A stretch of 63,164 nucleotides of DNA, the filler included, from Octopus bimaculoides (taxonomy: Eukaryota), in assembly GCF_001194135.2 (NCBI RefSeq). It is 5 parts of 4 records of this genome, joined end to end, with 100 filler letters (N's around TTAATTAATTAA, not from the genome) between each part and the next. Parts side by side here need not be neighbours in the genome. Positions count along the whole stretch, not along the records: positions 1 to 18,425 come from NC_068994.1; 4 more parts are not named here. One strand, given 5' to 3'. Position 1 is the stretch's first letter. Each line of letters opens with the position of its first letter. The position numbers were made by a program, and so were the translations under genes. The notes below the pieces were generated by a model. The model ran no database searches and was not told where the DNA came from. It was given only the letters and a program-made list of their open reading frames with translations. Below are positions 13,490 to 59,498 of the stretch, one piece after another.

Positions 13490-13775
13490 TTGTTAATGTT
13501 CTTTTGAAGCTCATTCAGATTAACATCTACAGGAAAGACGTGAGTTGGGAAGAGATACCAGAAAATCGATGTTCTGGGGGAAGAAGGAATGGGCATAATG
13601 ACACGCACAGAGTTCGCTCTGTCGTCAATGAAGGTGATGAGAAGTAGAGGGATGAGTGAATTGGAGGTGGGTGGTGGAGTTATGTGACCAGACAGATCTA
13701 AAGAACATATGCCATTATGATAGCAATAGAGAAAACAGAAAGAGGAAACATGGACCAGGGGTTGAAACATGCTTG
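13490..13775 (-). mobile_element. 3' end fragment of a CR1/L2-group LINE ORF2
   Basis: ORF 13462-13770 FQPLVHVSSFCFLYCYHNGICSLDLSGHITPP...SPRTSIFWYLFPTHVFPVDVNLNELQKNINNI resembles, from recall, the CR1-group C-terminus (LFYRY..G.CS.EL...PP...FFPRT..LWN.LP..VFP...L..FK..IN). Confidence 0.6.
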
Positions 13776-14761
13776 TTAATATCTAAATGCTAACCAACCA
13801 AGTGTACTTCTACGATTTTTGTAGAGACTTTTATAATTTTCTTATATTAAATGTATCCTTTTTGTTTTTTCATTGTAGCTGTGCCATGAAGTTCACACCC
13901 ATGAAAATATTTGGGTAGGTGTCAAATTAATTTTCTAATAAATATATAGTTAATTTTTTTAACCAGTTTTGTTCTTATTGTATTTTCTTACTAATGTTGT
14001 TCTAAGCTGTATAGACTGTGTATTGCATGAGTTCATTTAAAGTAGTATCTCATTCTTGCTACTCTCTGTTTCTTATATTATCATCTTTACATAATAGCAT
14101 ATGTTTCTCATTGTCAATGAGTACAGATATCCCCCAGTGTGCATGTAATATTTCTCTAAGCATGAATATTCTTTAGAAAGAGAAAAAGTCATAAATGCCT
14201 GTGACAGTGAAACAGAACTGTCAAAACTTCAGTATTCTGAAGTCTTCATGAAAAATTCATAACTAGAGAATAATTATTTGCTAGAGAGAATATTTTGATG
14301 CTTCAGTATGACAGATAAGAGATTAAAAATGAGCAAATCCTTGCTGATTAAAAAAAATGAATTCCATATATGCAAATAAAAAAAAGGGGGTAACTACTGA
14401 TTTACAGATGCTATTATAGCATAAGCGTTGACTCAAACATTCTGCAGAAGGAAAGCAAATGTAATAGCAAGCTCTAACTGCAAGGACTTTACAACTACAT
14501 CTTCTTTTGTTTGTTAGTGAAGGGAAGCCAAAATGGAATCATTTTGGACCTTTGGATTTCAAACTACATTCGAAATGTAAATTATTCTGGGAAAGTAATT
14601 CAGTTCAGAGCATTTGATTGACAGAATTATTTGAGTATTGGACATGACTTTTTTTTCTTGAGCCCTTGGACTTTTAAAGCCAGTTACCCTGATTCCATGG
14701 TATATAAATAACTGAGATCAGGGGAAATATTTCCCCTGAATGGAACATCAATCCATTGCAG

Positions 14762-14871: not shown

Positions 14872-17314
14872 ACCATCATGCTAATGATTCTGTCAACTCA
14901 CTACCTCACTGGACCTGATACCTTGCAGTATTTCTCCTTTGTAGACTGAGTTCTTTAATGGTAGACTTAGTCCATCTCTTAATTTCACACCACTGTGAAG
15001 TCCTTGGATGCTTTAAGCAATGTTCACCCTGTTGCAGACACCAGGATCAGGTTTCCATATTAAGGATACTTTTCTCCTTTTCACACCCATCTTAGAGGAT
15101 CATGGATGTTGCCTTTCTATCTCAGACTAAATGGTTAAAAACTAAAATCATGGAATCTCTGAGTAATTAAAGTTGCTGCTTTATTTTTCTAAATATCCTA
15201 GTTTTTCACACCTATTCAGGTTACATTACTTTAATTCTACGTACTGGCTTCCTTTAGCAAGTACTGTGAAATCTATGTTTCATGAAGGAAGTTAAATAAT
15301 ACCAACATATATCTAAAGTTTTTCACCATACTTGCTGAAATAATTAAAATAACATTAATCATTGAACCAATATTGTCTGTTGCTCACTGCATTAAAAGTT
15401 TTACATCAAGCATGTTCACCCCATACATAATCATCAGATTTTATGCATGTTGTATCACTCAACTACTGAATTCAGCATTCTTTTTTTAGTCAGCTTAGTT
15501 CCTAATTTAAGTATAGATGTAAGAACATCTTAAAATATCTAGTCTCACAGTTGACTCAGTGGAAAATCATATCACATTTGCCATTGACCATTCTTTTTAC
15601 ATGACAAACATATACCAATTTAAGCTTTCTCAGAATGTTGCTTTACTGCTGTAGGATGGTTTGTAATGTTTAATAGCCTGTTGGTGTATGTTATCTTGAG
15701 ATATGTTCTTCTAACAGACACACTCCTGACAGACACACTCTCTTTCTCAAAACAATACAATACTCTAGAAACATTTAAAACAGAGTTTAGATAGTGTTTA
15801 CACTTCTTATGTAATATTTACATTTCTAATCCAAGTAAAGCAAATAACTTGGGGAAATTAAGATTTAGTTATAATTTAATGTAAGTATTAATTTAAATGT
15901 ATAAAGTATATAAAAGAAATATTACTTACCATTGAATATTTATTAGTCTAGCTAAGATATTTTGTGTTCAAGTGATGAGTATTTTGCTTTTCTATGGTTG
16001 CCAGTGACATCAATGTTAAGCAGGTGTAATTTGTATTGTTATATCGCTAACAAGATGCCATTCATTATATCATAGCTTTCAAATGTCTGAAAACTAGAGT
16101 GACATAGCAGCTTTGAATTGAATAATTAGTTTGTAACAAAATGAATGAAACAAATATCTAAGACATAGAAAAAGGTTTCATCAAGATCTAAATGTTTGTA
16201 AACAATTTTTATTAATTACTTTGTTGCTGTGATACTTCTGTCTACACTTCAGCAATTATTATATTTTACTAATGACAAACCAACATGGAAATCCTTGTTT
16301 CTTTTGAAATAGTATGGAAGATAATAATTACTGTTACATTTGTAATATGTGTAAGCATGTTGATATTACAAATGAACTGCAATATTTGCACCTGTTGTTG
16401 AGAAGCAATCCGTAGGAAAGTTTAACAGGATTCCTATAAACTTTTTGGCGTGTTTTTTTTTTATATTTTGATAAATTGTTTGCAAATTTGTTGTTGGAAT
16501 GTTAAGCAAATATTACAATTGCAGATAATTTTAAGACCAATGTAGCAAAATAAAATAGATAGAATTGTTTATTTACAACTAAGGATTTATATACAATAAG
16601 TCTTTGTGAATATATTTATATCTTTATATAGCTTTTGGCCTTTGTACTCATGCCACTTTGTACTTAAACTTCACAGTACTTGTTTTAGATAAAAAAAAAC
16701 CCACAAAACAATAATAATAAAAAGATGATGGTATTGTCTCAATAGTACAAATCAATCAATTTGCAATAAACTTGAAAGAATTATCCTGGTTTGTGATTTT
16801 TTGCTTTTGTTTCATTTTGTTTTTAATATTTCCTTCTTTTCTCAGTTTAAACTCAGATAAATACTGTTTGCAAAGATGAAGGGAATTACTGGAATATTTC
16901 TGTAATAATTAGCTGGCTTTGAAAATATATAGGGCATCATATTTGAAGATTTAGTAAACTATAGTGCTATAGCTTATTAAAGACTCTGTTTGTTTAAAAT
17001 ACCTTATTTTTTTATTAGACTAGAAAAACATCAACAACATGAAGCAAAATACAACTGTCAGTAATTACACAGAAGCTAAGTTAATGTTTTTCCTAGAAGA
17101 ATTATGTAGAAATTATATATAAAATATATTCTGATTTATGCAATATCTTTCTGTAGCATAGCAGTCATGCTTATTTACAATAATTAGAATAATTATAGAG
17201 GGGGTTAAACATGTTTACTGTTAATTATATTGACGTTTTACATTTGAAAAGAACCTATGTGTAACATTGGTAGTTCTCGTTAGAAAAGACTTAATGAATG
17301 GAATAAAGTTATTT

Positions 17315-17580
17315 TTATGGTTTTGGTACTTTAGGTACCGATGGCAGGGGTTTGGGGAAAGAAGAGAAGCTATTTTTTATTGGTAAATTCCAAGGTTCTG
17401 GGAGATTAGCAGTTTTTATTCTTAAGGATTTAAGATCAATAACATCATTGCAGACAGTTTTTTTATCAACAATAGCTTGACTGGAAGGTTTTGTAGAAAT
17501 ATCCTTGGGTTTGTGTGATGTCCATGGTAAAGAACTCCTACTTTTGTGTTGCTGTTGATCCTCTTGACTGTGCTTGAAAC
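17315..17580 (-). CDS. Terminal coding exon, probably the cytoplasmic tail of an upstream protocadherin
   Basis: After a long T-rich tract and ...ttacgAG|, GT then 87 open codons: FKHSQEDQQQHKSRSSLPWTSHKPKDISTKPSSQAIVDKKTVCNDVIDLKSLRIKTANLPEPWNLPIKNSFSSFPKPLPSVPKVPKP* (TAA 17317-17315). Non-repetitive, higher GC than its flanks, same strand as the downstream protocadherin. The LPEPWNLP..NSF..KPLP ending resembles octopus protocadherin tails from recall only. AATAAA on the minus strand at 17011-17016. Confidence 0.65.
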
Positions 17581-18200
17581 CTCGTAAAAATAAACAAAGA
17601 AAACAAAATGTTCATCATGAGCTGAAATTACACTGTATGAACATTCTATTTATTGAATTCTAATTATTGTTATGCTATATTTTTGTAACTAGTTATATTC
17701 CCTGTCTTTACATAAACATCATTATATTTATATCACATTGAATATTATTAATATCCATGGTGTAATTTTTTAAGAAATTAAACTTGTCTTGAGCATTAAT
17801 TTTAGTTATATTCCTCAATATATTAATCTATAGAAATATAAAAGGAAATATTTATTCATTTAATAGTAATTAAGAGAAATTTACTATTGATATCTATTGT
17901 TGAGGATAATATTACATCCAAAATATTGAATGCATAAAAAAAATATGTAAAAGCAGTGAAGAGCAAGCACGTCCTTCTGAGTTTTGTATAAGTAACAAAT
18001 ATTTGTTAATAAAACATTGAAATAGTGAAAATTATTAAAATAAGGTAAATTTTACTATTGTTTAATAAAATGAATAGTCTATTTTTCAATGAAACTATTC
18101 TCTAGTTAGTGCTCAAATAATTTTCAAAGCAATCCAAAATATATACACCCCAAGAACTATGTGTATACGTGTGTGTGTGTGTATTTATATATATATATAT

Positions 18201-18425
18201 CATCATCATCATCGTTTAACATCCGCTTTCCATGCTAGCATGGGTTGGACGATTTGACTGAGGACTGGTGAAACCGGATGGCAACACCAGGCTCCAATCT
18301 AATTTGGCAGAGTTTCTACAGCTGGATGCCCTTCCTAACGCCAACCACTCAGAGAGTGTAGTGGGTGCTTTTACGTGTCACCCGCACGAAAACGGCCATG
18401 CTCGAAATGGTGTCTTTTATGTGCC
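18201..18425. mobile_element. Young interspersed repeat with (CAT)n end; carries the ggatgcccttcctaacgccaacc motif (reverse ggttggcgttaggaagggcatcc), probably RTE-associated
   Basis: Paralog at 10547; motif recalled from RTE-clade-linked elements (not verified); truncated by a linker gap. Confidence 0.6.
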
Positions 18426-18525
18426 NNNNNNNNNNNNNNNNNNNNNNNNNNNNNNNNNNNNNNNNNNNNTTAATTAATTAANNNNNNNNNNNNNNNNNNN
18501 NNNNNNNNNNNNNNNNNNNNNNNNN
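18426..18525. other. Artificial scaffold-join linker N44-TTAATTAATTAA-N44
   Basis: Exactly 100 bp; the 12-mer has stops in all six frames; identical structure at four places. Confidence 0.95.
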
Positions 18526-34703: not shown

Positions 34704-35399
34704 GTATGTATTTATGTGTGTATGTATGTAGGTATATGTGCATGTTTGTATGCATGCATGCGTATATGTATATGTGTGTTGTGTTTGTGTTGAGGTTGTC
34801 ATAATTTAACGGTTCGGTTAAAACAGCGATAGAATATATATCATGCTTAAAAAAAACATAAGTATATTCATTCAACCAAAATTCTTTAAAGCGGCACCTG
34901 CATTGCCACTGTCTGGTGGCTGAAACAAGTAAAAGCTACAGGGTAAAAGTGAGTGATAACTAGATTGTAGCTCCTGATAGTGAAGCATTCGGAGAACCAT
35001 ACCGTGATGCTTCTTAAGATATTTTATAAGAAATGGAAACAGAGTTGCTGCTATCATGTATTAGTGAATTTTAAAAAGAACTCTATTTGAACTCGTGGGA
35101 AAATTGTATTACCATAAAACAAAATACATATTTGAAAATGGTCCAGTACATTCAAACTCGGAGAGTGTCTTACAGAATACAAATGTAAAGAGTGGCTTGC
35201 TTAATCAAAGATCAATGCATGTTTCATACATATGAGATACACAAAACAAACGTGAGAAACTGATAAAATGACCGGGTGAGAATTGCGAATGTTAGAGAAT
35301 TCTCAATTGTTTTAAAGATTGCATTGATGACCACCTCTTTCGGTCACAAATAGCCATGGGATTGCATGTAGAAATTACCCTCCGAGGCACAATCCAGGG

Positions 35400-35630
35400 A
35401 AGGTTGTTTGCGCAAGACCAGCAGTCATCCATGTATACCAGTCTTAACTTTCCACGCTACCAATGTTGTCCTAGGGGAAGGCAAAGGCCAATACAGCTTG
35501 GCATGGAGTAATATGAAATAAAATGTCTTGCGCAAGAACAAAGCACAACATACAGCTCGTTCCAGGAATCGAACTAACAACCCCACGGTTCTAAGACCGA
35601 TTCTCTAGCTATTGAGTCATGCACATTCAC
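35400..35630 (-). mobile_element. tRNA-derived SINE, degenerate
   Basis: Reverse complement starts gtgaatgtgcatgactcaatagctagagaatcgg...gttagttcgattcctgga (A and B box-like). Confidence 0.6.
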
Positions 35631-37519: not shown

Positions 37520-38052
37520 ACAGGATTTCATGGCTTTTGATCTTAACTGATTGAAAGTGTCATCATGAATATTGTTTCATCTTGGTATAAAAGTTAGTCT
37601 ACAGCAAATATTCTTCTCAATATCAGAGATTTGCTTGTCAGTTGCTTAACCGTAAGCAGTTGAGCATGTCCCTTAGTGGCTGGTGATAGGTGTTTCGTTG
37701 ATTATGAGCAGAAGTAGTGAGGGGTCATCAGAGCCATATGTTGAAAGGAATTATTTGGAGTTTGAATAGTCCACCTATGGAAACTTAGGTGTTTTGTTCA
37801 TCATCTTTAAACAACCCTTATTCAGGGTATTTTGAGCAGGTTCGGCTACTCAACCTGAAGAAAATTCTCACAGGGTTTCATCTGCAAGCTCATGCGCTGT
37901 TTATCTTGGTATGAGATCACCATGTGACGCAGATATGAATGTAATGCATGTTCCTGGTATACTCTTATCAGATGGGTAGTAATGATGGGTATATTAGGCT
38001 TCAACTGCTTGTACCCCGGTGTACCTTTGATGGTGTGCCCTGCCATCTCACT
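37520..38052 (-). mobile_element. Unclassified ~530 bp interspersed repeat between two degenerate (AAT)n arrays
   Basis: GC-richer segment bracketed by AAT-type runs; resembles a frequent Octopus repeat from recall; no credible ORF. Confidence 0.4.
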
Positions 38053-38519
38053 CAATAATAATCATAATAATAATAATAATAGTAATAACAACACGATAAC
38101 AATAATTTCATTTATTTACCACAGTGTGAGGGTTCACATATAAAGTAATGATAGAAAAAAAAAGAAAGTATACACGGTATACATGGGAAAAAAGGGGCAT
38201 ATGGATAGCTGAGAAAGGTTGTTTTTTTTTTAATATTTCAGGGAGAATGAGAGAGATGTGACCCTTCTGATACAGGAAGGCCTCTAGGGATAATCGAGGA
38301 GCCCCACTGTACGAGATTTCCCTGAAACCCCAGGAGCAAGTGCCCTCTCCAATGCCTTCTCTCCCACTACAGTTAGAGAAGTAGCATCTGGTTTATTAGC
38401 TTTGATGGTCCTGTCTACCAACAATTGGGTTCATTTTTCTTGACTTTCCTCTTTCTCTTCTCTCTTTCTCTCTCCCACTCTCTGTCTAGCTGTCTATTTA
38501 GCCATCCATCCACCCATCT

Positions 38520-38697: not shown

Positions 38698-39849
38698 ATG
38701 TCTATCTCTATGGGACATTGGCTCACTTCGGACCTGGAAAGGAACGGTTGCAGCTAAGATGAGAAAAACTCATAATGCGTCATATTACGTTTTAAAATTT
38801 ATTAGTAAATTTTAGGATATAATGTTCGAAATTTGAAGCTTCTGTAGTAACAGTTCAATGTTTTTTTTTACAATGGCCATTGTGTCACTATGTCTTTTCT
38901 TTTTCACATATGTTATAATATTTTATTTTGGTCAAGTTTATGACAAGATTTTGCAGCAGTATTTATAGAGATAACAGTTTTGATGTTATAAACGATGACC
39001 GATCTGAAAACTACTGCTGATATCGTTCTATTATCATTTCACTGAGGAGTTTAGTAGAATATCACATATAAAAAAGAAAACTATTAAAAATTACTTTAAC
39101 AACATTATAATTATGGCATTCTATGATTGCTAATAGTCACCAAGAAACAAAGAAAAATGCGAAAGAAAAAATTACTAAAGGCGAATTATTAGTACTAGTT
39201 TCACTTAAAGAATCTAATAAATATTCTTGTCTCATTCATTTACCCTAAAACAAAACTGTAAACAAGAGACACTGAAAATAATAATTGAATCAGTTGATTA
39301 ATGAGGAAATTATTAAACGCAATCACACACAATCAGACACACACACAATAAAATATACATGCACATACACTCGTATGTATAGTAATGCATATTACTATAT
39401 TAAAGTGTCGGTGCGCGTGTGTCTAACACAAATAGTATACGTTTCCTCTTAAAAAAAATCTTACGAGTTTAAACTTGCATGTAAATTGAAGCAGTGGTTA
39501 CATCATATGCTTTGTTCTTTCTAGGAGCAGAAAAGTAAAACCAGTCTGATAACGTACAACTGATATTATACTGTCATCAGGGAAACGAATAGCTATATTC
39601 ATTTCGTGAAGAGGTTCTTAGATAATTGCTATGCGCTGCATAAACAATCTGCGGTTGACCTAAACTGATCAGCCTAATTTGTATAACAGTAAGTACTCGC
39701 AAAAGCTGGATTAATTAATCCATTTATAATGCACTACAGAAAATTGTCGATAACTTTGAAATGAAAGATATACGGTTTTCATACTCCTATAAGTTTAACG
39801 TCACTGTCAAAAGTGCATCATAAAGTTTGTACGTCCGTTGAAAAAAATT

Positions 39850-40062
39850 CTTTCTGCTATAGGCACAAGGCTTAGAATTTTGGAGGAGGACGTAAGTCGA
39901 TTACATCGACCCCAGTACTCAAATGGTACTTAATTTGTCGACCTCGAAAGTATGAAAGGCAAAGTCGACCTCGGCGGAATTTGAAATCGGAACGTAGCGG
40001 CAGACAAAATATTGCTTAGCATTTCGCCCGGCCTGCTAGCAACTCTGCCAGCTCACCGCCTT
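39850..40062 (-). mobile_element. SINE family A, full length
   Basis: tttctgctataggcacaagg...aaaggcaaagtcgacctcggcggaatttgaa...gcatttcgcccgg...ctctgccagctcaccgcctt. Confidence 0.9.
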
Positions 40063-45802: not shown

Positions 45803-45989
45803 GCATGTCAGTCGTCAGGTATGTATGCGTAGACCTGTGAGTGTTTAATAACGTACCGTGATAATATGTCTGTATTTTTGTATGCAGTGTAAATTAATCC
45901 CCCCAAAATTACAGTATCGAAAAGTTTCAGTTTTGATACTGAAATAGTGGAAAAGTTTCATTTTTAAAGTGAAAGTATTTGACATGAGT

Positions 45990-46200
45990 GTTTTTGTTTC
46001 ACTTTTGACACGTAATACTTAAATAGTGGAGGAGATATTATGTTGCTGTGGGCTCGAACTATGCAAGAAGTTAAAAAAAAAATTTCGACTAAAACACAAC
46101 CTAAGTAAGGCATGTGTAAAATTTGAATGAGATTGGTTGTGTAGTTCTGGAGTTTTAGGGATTCACACACACACAGACACACAGACACACAGACATACAT
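45990..46200. mobile_element. Possible Helitron/DINE-like non-autonomous repeat fragment
   Basis: tgtaaaatttgaatgagattggttgtgtagttctggagtttt followed by an acacacagac microsatellite, an arrangement recalled from such elements; not verifiable here. Confidence 0.3.
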
Positions 46201-58255: not shown

Positions 58256-59498
58256 CAGGGTGTGATGGGTAAATAGTTGCCATTTTATACTTTTAATTTT
58301 ATGTATGTGCATTGTTTGTTTTTGATTTTATCAACTACACAGTATAGTAGGGCACCATCTGTGAGAAAAACAACTCCTTGACCCAATTCACTCAGCCAGA
58401 AATTTGGAAATGACATGCTGTACTGTGCGGCACTCACACCAGACGCTCCATTACAAACATTTCAGGGTGTTTGGGTATCAATCTGAGGTCAGTGGAGAGG
58501 ATTCGGAAAGAGTTGGATGAGTCTAATGGTGATTACGAAAGTACAGCAGCTCACTCTGATCGTTTTAATGAGAAAAGAACTCTTGAATTTGTTGGTGAGA
58601 TCCAGGTAATGATTGACAACAATCCCTCCAAGACAATCAGGTCCATCGCCAGGGACATGGAAGTGTATGAGTTTCTTATTAGGCAGGTAGTGCATGAAGA
58701 CATTCAGTATTCCTCGTACAAGATAAGAAAGGGCCAATTTTTATCCCAAACCACCAAGGACAAGAGGAAAGACTGCGCTATGAAGCTATTGAACAAACTC
58801 AAGCATCCCCTCCAATTGAACATGCTTTAGTTTTTCTCAGACGAGAAAAAATTCTGTCAGGATCAGGTGGTGAACCCGTTGACTTGCTGTGTCCCCAAAA
58901 CATGTACCAAGAGTGATAAGAATCAAACATCCAGTCAACATCATGATACTTGGAGTGATCCATTCGTCTTCCCACATGGCCACAGAATCAACACGGAGGC
59001 CTACATCATGTGCCTGCAGGAGATACTGCTGCCCTCGGTCAAGAGGATGGCTGCTGGAAGACCCTATGTCTAGCAACAGGACTCTGCACCATGCCACACA
59101 AGCAGGAGAACCCAGTCATGGCTGTCAGACAATTTCTGTGACCACATCACCCCTAACATCTGGCCACCTAATTCCCCAGACTACAACAACCCCATTGATT
59201 ATTACGTGTGGTGCACAGTTGAGCAAGAGACCAACAAAACGCCTTGTAACACCAAAGTTGAATTGAAGGCAAGGATGATGGCAGCATTTAGCAACAAGGA
59301 GATCGTCCAGAAGAGCTGCAGGAGATTTCAAAGTCGTATGGAACCTGTGGTTGAAGCCAATGGCAGTTTTATTGAATAAATTTACTCTCTAGTATTTCAA
59401 GATATTTTAATGTAATTTTGATAACTATATCTCTTAAAATAAAATGTTAGTGTTATTTTCCTTTTTGCGTAATTTAGACAACAATTTATTCACAGCAC

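What the first reader, a model, noticed from the sequence alone, without database searches (positions are those of the whole stretch)
17315..17580. Orphan terminal exon: a likely protocadherin tail with no ectodomain exon in the 45 kb upstream
Seen: an 87-codon non-repetitive minus-strand frame with a stop and a downstream AATAAA, about 11.3 kb upstream of the next promoter; no cadherin-coding sequence was found by eye from 17.6 to 63.2 kb, and a scaffold linker lies about 850 bp upstream. Inference: either a very long intron, a missing or misplaced scaffold, or a tail exon shared by several distant ectodomain exons (like the vertebrate variable/constant design). The last is the exciting but unproven option.
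Basis: partly seen in the sequence, partly recalled or inferred. Interest (0 to 1): 0.7.

Follow-up and report, generated by a model that had tools for sequence, protein, structure and literature searches.

The report
Last exon of an octopus protocadherin
The 87-codon frame is a real coding exon, the private last exon of an ordinary three-exon octopus protocadherin gene; it only looked orphaned because the sequence piece ends 845 bases upstream of it.

Summary
The frame exists as described. Minus strand 17580->17315 has a poly-pyrimidine tract, an AG acceptor, 87 codons and a TAA stop.

ORF length alone is not significant, since about one such ORF is expected by chance in this AT-rich piece. 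Homology is decisive:
- Against 1.84 billion proteins the peptide hits ten octopod proteins, all at their extreme C-terminus (best E 1.7e-14).
- One hit belongs to the same cluster as the 939-aa Octopus vulgaris protocadherin QBA31102.1.
- A profile of 13 other tails hits only this frame in the window (82 bits, E 8.7e-25).

All relatives share the same phase-1 intron inside a Gly codon. Six O. vulgaris and Argonauta hians loci, taken together, show a three-exon gene, complete in two of them:
- a large ectodomain/TM exon;
- a small exon ending ...HYEELPG;
- this tail exon.

Introns range from 0.4 kb to over 35 kb. Each gene has its own diverged tail (28-56% identity between paralogues). One orthologous pair gives dN/dS 0.13.

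"No ectodomain in the 45 kb upstream" is an artefact, because the piece ends at 18425. A shared, vertebrate-style constant exon is not supported by the data or the literature. The finding is ordinary. The one mildly new point is an undescribed conserved tail motif with an SH3-ligand-like KPLPxVP.

The parts
17315..17580 (-). Terminal coding exon (exon 3 of the three-exon design) of an octopod protocadherin gene. It carries two bases of a split Gly codon, 87 codons and a TAA stop (17317-17315). Peptide: (G)FKHSQEDQQQHKSRSSLPWTSHKPKDISTKPSSQAIVDKKTVCNDVIDLKSLRIKTANLPEPWNLPIKNSFSSFPKPLPSVPKVPKP*
   Evidence: Translation. phmmer against 1.84 billion representatives gives 10 octopod hits, all C-terminal, best E 1.7e-14. 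An HMM of 13 other tails scores 82 bits, E 8.7e-25, on this frame only. GC is 36.8% against 22-26% in the flanks.
17581..17608 (-). 3' splice site: poly-pyrimidine tract (about 17608-17586) and acceptor AG (17582-17581). The intron is phase 1, inside a Gly codon.
   Evidence: Sequence. The same intron position and phase occur in L001-L005 tail exons, matched by exon-2 donors ...CCNG|gt. The cDNA P0012 and the genomic ORF P0006 diverge exactly at this Gly.
17426..17452 (-). Conserved block 1 of the tail: CNDVIDLKS (residues 44-52).
   Evidence: Alignments A1. I48 and K51 are invariant; D46 and L50 are conserved in at least 90% of sequences.
17330..17395 (-). Conserved block 2: PWNLPIKNSFSSFPKPLPSVPK (residues 63-84). 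It includes KPLPSVP, which fits the class-I SH3-ligand consensus [RK]xxPxxP.
   Evidence: W64, N65, P67, N70, S71, F72, P78, L79 and P83 are invariant in A1. The motif reading is inference from the published SH3-ligand consensus, not tested.
17011..17016 (-). Nearest downstream AATAAA, a candidate poly(A) signal. Weak.
   Evidence: The hexamer occurs once per ~508 nt on this strand, so it is not significant.
1..351 (-). Start of the next protocadherin gene, head-to-tail with the tail exon's gene. ATG at 351-349, then signal peptide and EC1. Cut off by the piece edge at base 1.
   Evidence: Pfam Cadherin_2 scores 26.3 bits, above the cut-off of 23. PDB Protocadherin-17 matches at E 8e-7. Identity to O. 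vulgaris protocadherin P0012 residues 8-124 is 48%. The octopus EC1 motifs TLVGNIAAD and DAELLC match Table S2 of PMC6339937.

Best explanation
The segment 17580->17315 (minus strand) is the last coding exon of a conventional, privately spliced octopod protocadherin gene.

Gene design. These genes have three coding exons:
- a large first exon encoding the signal peptide, cadherin repeats, transmembrane helix and juxtamembrane region;
- a small second exon of about 40-65 codons ending ...HYEELPG;
- this third exon, joined through a phase-1 intron inside a Gly codon.

Exons 1 and 2 of this gene lie upstream, beyond the edge of the piece at 18425.

Product. The exon supplies the extreme C-terminus of the cytoplasmic domain. 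It carries two conserved blocks, (C)xDVIDLKS and PWNLPxxNSF(T/S)(S/T)(Y/F)xKPLPxVPK. The second contains a class-I SH3-ligand consensus. The likely role is therefore a docking site that links each adhesion receptor to a common cytoplasmic partner.

Context. About 17 kb further downstream on the same strand the next protocadherin gene begins, which is the head-to-tail layout of octopus protocadherin clusters.

What is shown and what is inferred:
- Shown: the homology, the splice position and phase, the terminal position, the one-ectodomain-one-tail layout in relatives, and purifying selection in an orthologous pair.
- Inferred: that this copy is transcribed and joined to a single upstream gene, and that the motif binds SH3 proteins.
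For: Homology:
- phmmer of the 87-aa peptide against 1.84 billion proteins gives 10 real hits (E 1.7e-14 to 3e-4), each matching at its last residues.
- The sources are O. bimaculoides, O. vulgaris, Argonauta hians and Logan assemblies. The cluster of P0006 contains QBA31102.1, 'protocadherin [Octopus vulgaris]', 939 aa.
- QBA31102.1 has the full cadherin ectodomain, the TM helix and this tail.
- The genomic ORF P0006 is identical to that cDNA from 'GFCPRE' to the stop and differs upstream. The tail is therefore a separate spliced exon in an expressed transcript.
- An HMM built from 13 tails without the window hits only this frame (82 bits, E 8.7e-25; the next best is 5 bits).
- All invariant residues of the family are present in the window copy.

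Gene structure in relatives:
- All tail exons share the phase-1 acceptor at the same Gly.
- L002 (A. hians) is a compact gene: ectodomain exon 7826-10255, exon 2 at 10699-10896, tail at 11684-11929.
- L003 (A. hians): ectodomain exon 7763-10162, exon 2 at 45948-46145, tail at 58511-58810, with no other ectodomain exon in between.
- In L001, L004, L005 and L006, exon 2 plus tail are present, with 10 to 35 kb of ectodomain-free sequence upstream.

Divergence and selection:
- Tails of paralogues are 28-56% identical. Orthologues are 76% and 89% identical.
- The orthologous tail exons in A. hians and O. vulgaris give dN/dS 0.13, and their introns are unalignable.

Context:
- A protocadherin EC1 exon lies on the same strand at 351-1.
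- Literature: PCDH genes in the squid D. pealeii sub-arrays are described there as multi-exonic and in one transcriptional orientation; cephalopods in general have no shared final exons and diversify by whole-gene duplication (PMC9068888). The octopus PCDH genes are 168 multi-exonic genes arranged head-to-tail (PMC6339937).
Against: - No transcript evidence exists for this particular copy.
- Its own exon 1 and exon 2 are not in the piece, so physical linkage to one ectodomain exon is unproven.
- No orthologue of this copy was found in the protein collections. The closest relative is about 49-56% identical.
- Ser-Ser-Phe replaces the usual Thr-Ser-Tyr (Y75 is conserved in at least 90% of sequences).
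- Only about 14 distinct tails surfaced in the databases, against 168 protocadherin genes reported for O. bimaculoides. I cannot show that every gene carries one. Truncated gene models and ORF callers that need a start codon are the likely reason.
- The SH3-docking function rests on a short consensus only.
Confidence: 0.85

Rival explanations
1. Relic exon. This would be the surviving last exon of a protocadherin gene whose upstream exons are dead, deleted or rearranged, so that it is no longer part of a functional mRNA.
For: Albertin et al. 2022 report fragmentary protocadherin-like reading frames, possible pseudogenes, throughout these clusters. The upstream exons cannot be seen. The near-invariant Tyr is replaced by Phe.
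Against: In a genome of ~27% GC, a neutral 87-codon frame would quickly acquire stops; the expected stop frequency is about 8% per codon. The frame, the acceptor, the stop position and all 11 invariant residues are intact.
Confidence: 0.08
2. Shared constant-type exon. Several distant ectodomain exons, each with its own promoter, would be alternatively spliced to this one tail, as in the vertebrate Pcdh alpha and gamma clusters.
For: This cannot be excluded for this locus, because the upstream region is missing. Introns of tens of kb are common in relatives. In mammals a constant exon can also be followed by further ectodomain exons, as at the alpha-to-beta boundary (own knowledge).
Against: One ectodomain exon is paired with one tail in L002 and L003, with no extra ectodomain exon in the 36-kb and 12-kb introns of L003. 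Many diverged tail paralogues exist, 28-56% identical, as diverged as the ectodomains (50-57%). Distinct tails are kept as orthologous pairs between Octopus and Argonauta. There is no homology to the vertebrate constant region (no Pfam hit). The literature explicitly states that cephalopods do not use shared final exons (PMC9068888).
Confidence: 0.04
3. Stand-alone small gene. This would be a tail-only product of about 130-200 aa made from an internal promoter, as the public 'hypothetical protein' models of O. vulgaris and A. hians suggest.
For: Tail-only models exist: CAI9732395.1, GAB1604377.1, GAB1604420.1 and others.
Against: The O. vulgaris models start with a one-codon 'ATG|GT' exon, which is a predictor artefact. 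The A. hians models start at an internal Met, in frame within an intact 2.4-kb ectodomain ORF. The O. vulgaris cDNA QBA31102.1 joins the ectodomain and the tail.
Confidence: 0.02
4. Chance open frame in AT-rich intergenic DNA.
For: About one ORF of 98 or more codons is expected by chance in the piece. AATAAA is common.
Against: E 1.7e-14 against 1.84 billion proteins. HMM E 8.7e-25 with a unique hit. The splice phase is conserved.
Confidence: 0.01

Closest known systems
C-terminal exon of Octopus vulgaris protocadherin QBA31102.1 (UniRef A0A411DYX6; Styfhals et al. 2019) and its Argonauta hians orthologue (P0015)
   Same: The length is similar (about 88-93 aa). The phase-1 intron sits in the same Gly codon. 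The DVIDLKS and PWNLPxxNSFxxYxKPLPxVPK blocks are shared. The stop comes 3-4 codons after the ...VPK that ends block 2. The gene lies in a protocadherin cluster.
   Different: Overall identity is only about 40%, so this is a paralogue and not an orthologue. The window copy has SSF in place of TTY. Its upstream exons are not visible.
Constant exons of the vertebrate clustered protocadherins (Pcdh alpha and gamma; Pfam Cadherin_tail)
   Same: Both encode the distal cytoplasmic tail of clustered protocadherins as small 3' exons separated from a large ectodomain exon by long introns. The conserved tail plausibly gives many different ectodomains a common intracellular output.
   Different: There is no sequence similarity (no Pfam hit). 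Vertebrates have one set of three constant exons per cluster, shared by all variable exons through alternative promoter choice and splicing. Here every gene carries its own diverged copy, so conservation arises by descent and not by sharing (PMC9068888).
Cytoplasmic motifs of vertebrate delta-protocadherins (CM1-CM3, the PP1-binding RRVTF, the WIRS motif)
   Same: These are short conserved linear motifs in an otherwise variable cytoplasmic domain. They are thought to dock cytoskeletal or signalling partners.
   Different: CM1-3 are reported absent from octopus protocadherins (PMC6339937). The NSF(T/S) stretch lacks the bulky hydrophobic residue at position -3 that WIRS requires (read from the alignment; own knowledge of the consensus). 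The octopod motif is not in the published list of octopus-specific motifs (EC1, EC5, EC6, TM, PP1).

Membership tests
Octopod protocadherin terminal (tail) exon | Protein homology to the C-terminus of a bona fide protocadherin | tested here: met
   P0012 (QBA31102.1) matches at 46.6% over 58 aa, E 9e-8. The family HMM scores 82 bits, E 8.7e-25. phmmer gives E 1.7e-14.
Octopod protocadherin terminal (tail) exon | Phase-1 intron inside the Gly codon that follows ...LP, with a poly-pyrimidine tract and AG | tested here: met
   AG at 17582-17581. The position and phase are the same in L001-L005.
Octopod protocadherin terminal (tail) exon | Family-invariant residues, and a stop a few codons after ...VPK | tested here: met
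   I48, K51, W64, N65, P67, N70, S71, F72, P78, L79 and P83 are all present. The stop comes 4 codons after K84.
Octopod protocadherin terminal (tail) exon | Lies in a protocadherin cluster, on the same strand as neighbouring protocadherin genes | tested here: met
   A protocadherin EC1 exon lies at 351-1 on the minus strand.
Octopod protocadherin terminal (tail) exon | Spliced in an mRNA to its own exon 2 and ectodomain exon | not testable with these tools
   The piece ends 845 bp upstream, and no exon-2-like sequence lies in 17612-18425. No transcript data for the source species are available.
Vertebrate-type constant exon of a variable/constant protocadherin cluster | Homology to the vertebrate constant region (Pfam Cadherin_tail and related) | tested here: not met
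   No Pfam hit for the window peptide or for any of the 10 aligned tails.
Vertebrate-type constant exon of a variable/constant protocadherin cluster | A single tail shared by many ectodomain exons; the tail is identical among cluster members | tested here: not met
   This was tested in relatives, not at this locus. Layout is one-to-one in L002 and L003. At least 14 distinct tails are 28-56% identical.
Vertebrate-type constant exon of a variable/constant protocadherin cluster | Several different first exons joined to this acceptor in cDNA | not testable with these tools
   This needs long-read cDNA of the source species.
Class-I SH3 ligand ([RK]xxPxxP) | Consensus present and conserved across paralogues | tested here: met
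   KPLPSVP in the window. The consensus is present in 12 of 13 other tails; P0008 has KPLSKVP (alignment).
Class-I SH3 ligand ([RK]xxPxxP) | Binds an SH3 domain | not testable with these tools
   A biochemical assay is needed.

The most novel reading that the evidence does not exclude
The upstream DNA is missing, so the evidence does not exclude that this particular tail exon is spliced to more than one upstream ectodomain exon. That would be a local, vertebrate-like variable/constant arrangement inside an octopus cluster.

A tamer and more likely novelty is also open. The octopod-specific tail motif DVIDLKS...PWNLPxxNSFTSYxKPLPxVPK, absent from Pfam and from the published octopus motif list, may be the common intracellular docking module of a subfamily of the expanded protocadherins. 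It would then do by sequence conservation what vertebrates do by exon sharing.
Probability: 0.04. Interest if true: 0.7.

Novelty: new member of a known kind. Interest (0 to 1): 0.15.

Why it matters
For the scan, the apparent orphan is explained. It is an ordinary terminal exon cut from its gene by the edge of the piece, and it should not be pursued as a constant exon.

Two small points are useful for annotation:
- Octopod protocadherin genes of this subfamily have a conserved three-exon design with introns that can exceed 35 kb. Public gene models therefore often split the tail off as a 'hypothetical protein', or drop it.
- The tail carries a strongly conserved, undescribed motif with an SH3-ligand consensus. 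This is a testable handle on what the expanded octopus protocadherins signal to inside the cell, which is currently unknown (PMC6339937).

Tried and rejected
- Word-indexed protein search with the single peptide and with the EC1 fragment found nothing. This is uninformative, because the same index missed P0001 and P0004, which share five or more exact 5-mers with the peptide. The exhaustive phmmer search found the family.
- Pfam on the peptide and on 10 tails found no family.
- Rfam on the whole piece gave no hit.
- The supplement of Styfhals et al. was searched for tail words (PEPW, WNLP, NSFT, VIDLK, KPLP and others), with no occurrence. Its motif table stops at TM and PP1.
- Albertin et al. 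2015 is not held in the library.
- I searched the piece for an exon-2-like sequence (...HYEELPG) by tblastn at E 50 and by regular expression. Nothing was found.
- Other long ORFs in the piece (8592-8834, 10283-10875, 12268-12510, 13275-13782, 14326-14538) gave no credible Pfam hit. Most long ORFs are microsatellite translations.
- ORF length and the AATAAA were rejected as evidence for an exon.
- The repeat finder output was dominated by N runs and microsatellites.
- The source species could not be identified. No orthologue of either the tail or the EC1 exon was retrievable.

Full report
**What is in the sequence**

On the minus strand the frame is open from 17611 to 17318 (98 codons stop-to-stop). 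A pyrimidine-rich run (about 17608-17586) ends in ...acgAG at 17582-17581. The exon therefore starts at 17580 with two bases of a split codon. It then runs through 87 whole codons to a TAA at 17317-17315.

The stretch is non-repetitive. It has no tandem array and no DNA-level match within the window or to six octopod loci.

**Is it more than chance?**

ORF length is not evidence by itself. First-order Markov shuffles of the piece give about one ORF of 98 or more codons. AATAAA occurs once per ~508 nt on this strand, including twice inside the exon, so the copy at 17016-17011 means little.

Three things do set the frame apart:
- Its GC content is 36.8%, against 22-26% in the flanks.
- A phmmer search of the 87-aa peptide against 1.84 billion proteins returned ten real hits (E 1.7e-14 to 3e-4). 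Each matched at its extreme C-terminus.
- A profile built from 13 other tails, without the window, hits only this frame in a six-frame translation of the piece (82 bits, E 8.7e-25; next best 5 bits).

**What the relatives are**

The hits come from Octopus bimaculoides (A0A0L8GV70, A0A0L8H751), O. vulgaris (CAI9732395.1 and two more on chromosome OX597827.1), Argonauta hians (four proteins, one named 'protocadherin beta-12-like') and Logan assemblies.

The 90% cluster of the genomic ORF P0006 also contains QBA31102.1, 'protocadherin [Octopus vulgaris]', 939 aa. That cDNA-derived protein has a signal peptide, the cadherin ectodomain, a TM helix and a cytoplasmic domain ending ...HYEELAG|FCPRELAK...CTDVIDLKSFRV...QSWNLPTGNSFTTYSKPLPAVPKVTHT.

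P0006 is identical to it from GFCPRE to the stop. Upstream it reads intron-like FLFVFLFK instead. In an expressed protocadherin, this tail is therefore a separately spliced terminal exon.

The window peptide aligns over its full length and keeps every invariant residue of the family: I48, K51, W64, N65, P67, N70, S71, F72, P78, L79 and P83.

**Gene design in relatives**

I fetched six loci and mapped the proteins with tblastn.

| Locus | Species | Ectodomain exon | Exon 2 | Tail exon | Exon 2-to-tail intron |
|---|---|---|---|---|---|
| L002 | A. hians | 7826-10255 | 10699-10896 | 11684-11929 | ~0.8 kb |
| L003 | A. hians | 7763-10162 | 45948-46145 | 58511-58810 | ~12 kb |
| L001 | O. vulgaris | none in ~18 kb upstream | 17879-17998 | 37907-38179 | ~20 kb |
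| L004 | O. vulgaris | none in ~35 kb upstream | 35349-35507 | 39718-40023 | ~4.2 kb |
| L005 | O. vulgaris | none in ~10 kb upstream | 10001-10120 | 14910-15194 | ~4.8 kb |
| L006 | A. hians | none in ~10 kb upstream | ~9932-10117 | 10791-11093 | ~0.7 kb |

- L002 is a compact gene.
- In L003 the intron after the ectodomain exon is 36 kb. No other ectodomain exon lies between that exon and the tail.
- One A. hians model (P0015) spans 144 kb.

In every locus the tail exon begins after a poly-pyrimidine tract and an AG, in phase 1 inside the same Gly/Ala codon. The exon-2 donors read ...CCNG|gt. The window's acceptor is the same.

The design is therefore three coding exons with very variable intron lengths, and each gene has its own tail.

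**Selection and divergence**

Tails of paralogues are 28-56% identical. The window copy is 32-49% identical to the others. The Octopus/Argonauta orthologous pairs are 76% and 89% identical.

For the pair L006/L004, dN is 0.14, dS is 1.08 and dN/dS is 0.13, while the adjacent introns do not align. Ectodomains of the same genes are 50-57% identical to QBA31102.1.

The tail is thus not 'constant'. It diverges with its gene, apart from the two motif blocks.

**Why it looked orphaned**

The 'linker about 850 bp upstream' is the artificial joint at 18426.

Within the piece, 17612-18425 is AT-rich intron-like sequence plus a SINE-like repeat. It holds no exon-2-like or cadherin-like coding. With introns of 0.4 to over 35 kb in relatives, exons 1 and 2 are simply expected beyond the edge.

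Downstream on the same strand, a protocadherin start exon begins at ATG 351-349 and runs off the piece at base 1. It encodes a signal peptide and EC1. Pfam Cadherin_2 scores above its cut-off, PDB Pcdh17 matches at E 8e-7, and the exon is 48% identical to QBA31102.1. That is 16,964 bp from the stop, with 2,164 N in four gaps. This is the head-to-tail arrangement described for octopus (PMC6339937; PMC9068888).

**Mechanism**

- Shown: this is the terminal cytoplasmic exon of a protocadherin paralogue.
- Inferred: it is spliced to one upstream gene and supplies the distal tail.
- Inferred: the conserved KPLPxVP fits the class-I SH3-ligand consensus [RK]xxPxxP. It is present in 12 of 13 other tails and in the window. 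The tail probably docks a common cytoplasmic partner.
- NSF(T/S) does not fit the WIRS consensus (own knowledge of that consensus).
- The last three residues are not conserved, so a PDZ ligand is unlikely.
- No Pfam family covers the tail. It is not among the published octopus-specific motifs.

**Comparison with the known**

The exon works like the cytoplasmic 3' exons of vertebrate clustered protocadherins, in that small tail exons lie far from a big ectodomain exon. It fails both testable membership criteria of a constant exon: there is no homology, and it is not shared in relatives.

Albertin et al. 2022 state that cephalopods do not splice multiple first exons to shared final exons, and that they diversify by full gene duplication. 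My locus comparison agrees.

**Verdict**

The 'orphan' and 'shared exon' readings are not supported.

| Reading | Probability |
|---|---|
| Ordinary private terminal exon | 0.85 |
| Relic exon | 0.08 |
| Shared exon | 0.04 |
| Stand-alone tail gene | 0.02 |
| Chance ORF | 0.01 or less |

Interest is low. The only mildly new item is the conserved octopod tail motif.

Noticed in passing
window 1-351 (minus strand), and 413-418: This is the start exon of the next protocadherin gene: ATG at 351-349, signal peptide, and EC1 with the octopus motifs TLVGNIAAD and DAELLC. It is cut off by the piece edge. An acceptor-like 'tttcag' sits about 60 nt upstream of the ATG, so the ATG exon may be preceded by a 5'-UTR intron and the promoter may lie further upstream.
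   Followed up: partly
window 18182-18387: A SINE-like interspersed repeat lies in the intron upstream of the tail exon. Copies 84-86% identical occur several times in the O. vulgaris loci L001 and L005. Further dispersed repeats lie at 10065-10234 and 10533-10724.
   Followed up: partly
L001 10001-10003, L004 10001-10003; L002 7826-10255, L003 7763-10162: Public tail-only 'hypothetical protein' models look like annotation artefacts. The O. vulgaris models begin with a one-codon ATG|GT exon. The A. hians models begin at an internal Met, in frame inside an intact 2.4-kb ectodomain ORF. That ORF is not listed as a called gene.
   Followed up: partly
L006 10791-11093 vs L004 39721-40023: The orthologous tail exons of Argonauta hians and Octopus vulgaris give dN 0.14, dS 1.08 and dN/dS 0.13, with unalignable flanking introns. 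The intron before the tail is 0.7 kb in Argonauta and 4.2 kb in Octopus.
   Followed up: yes
window 1488-2455, 3175-3958, 6161-6180, 7140-7531: There are four N gaps totalling 2,164 bases, each bordered by TA/TG microsatellites. This is a short-read scaffold, so the 17-kb distance between the tail exon and the next gene is only approximate.
   Followed up: no
The word-indexed protein search returned nothing for the tail peptide, although P0001 and P0004 share the exact run CNDVIDLKS with it. Single-sequence negatives from that tool were not reliable here.
   Followed up: partly
window 9311-9410 and 9727-9826: A ~100-bp direct repeat, 82.5% identical, flanks a GA/TG-rich low-complexity stretch. 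Its nature is unknown.
   Followed up: no
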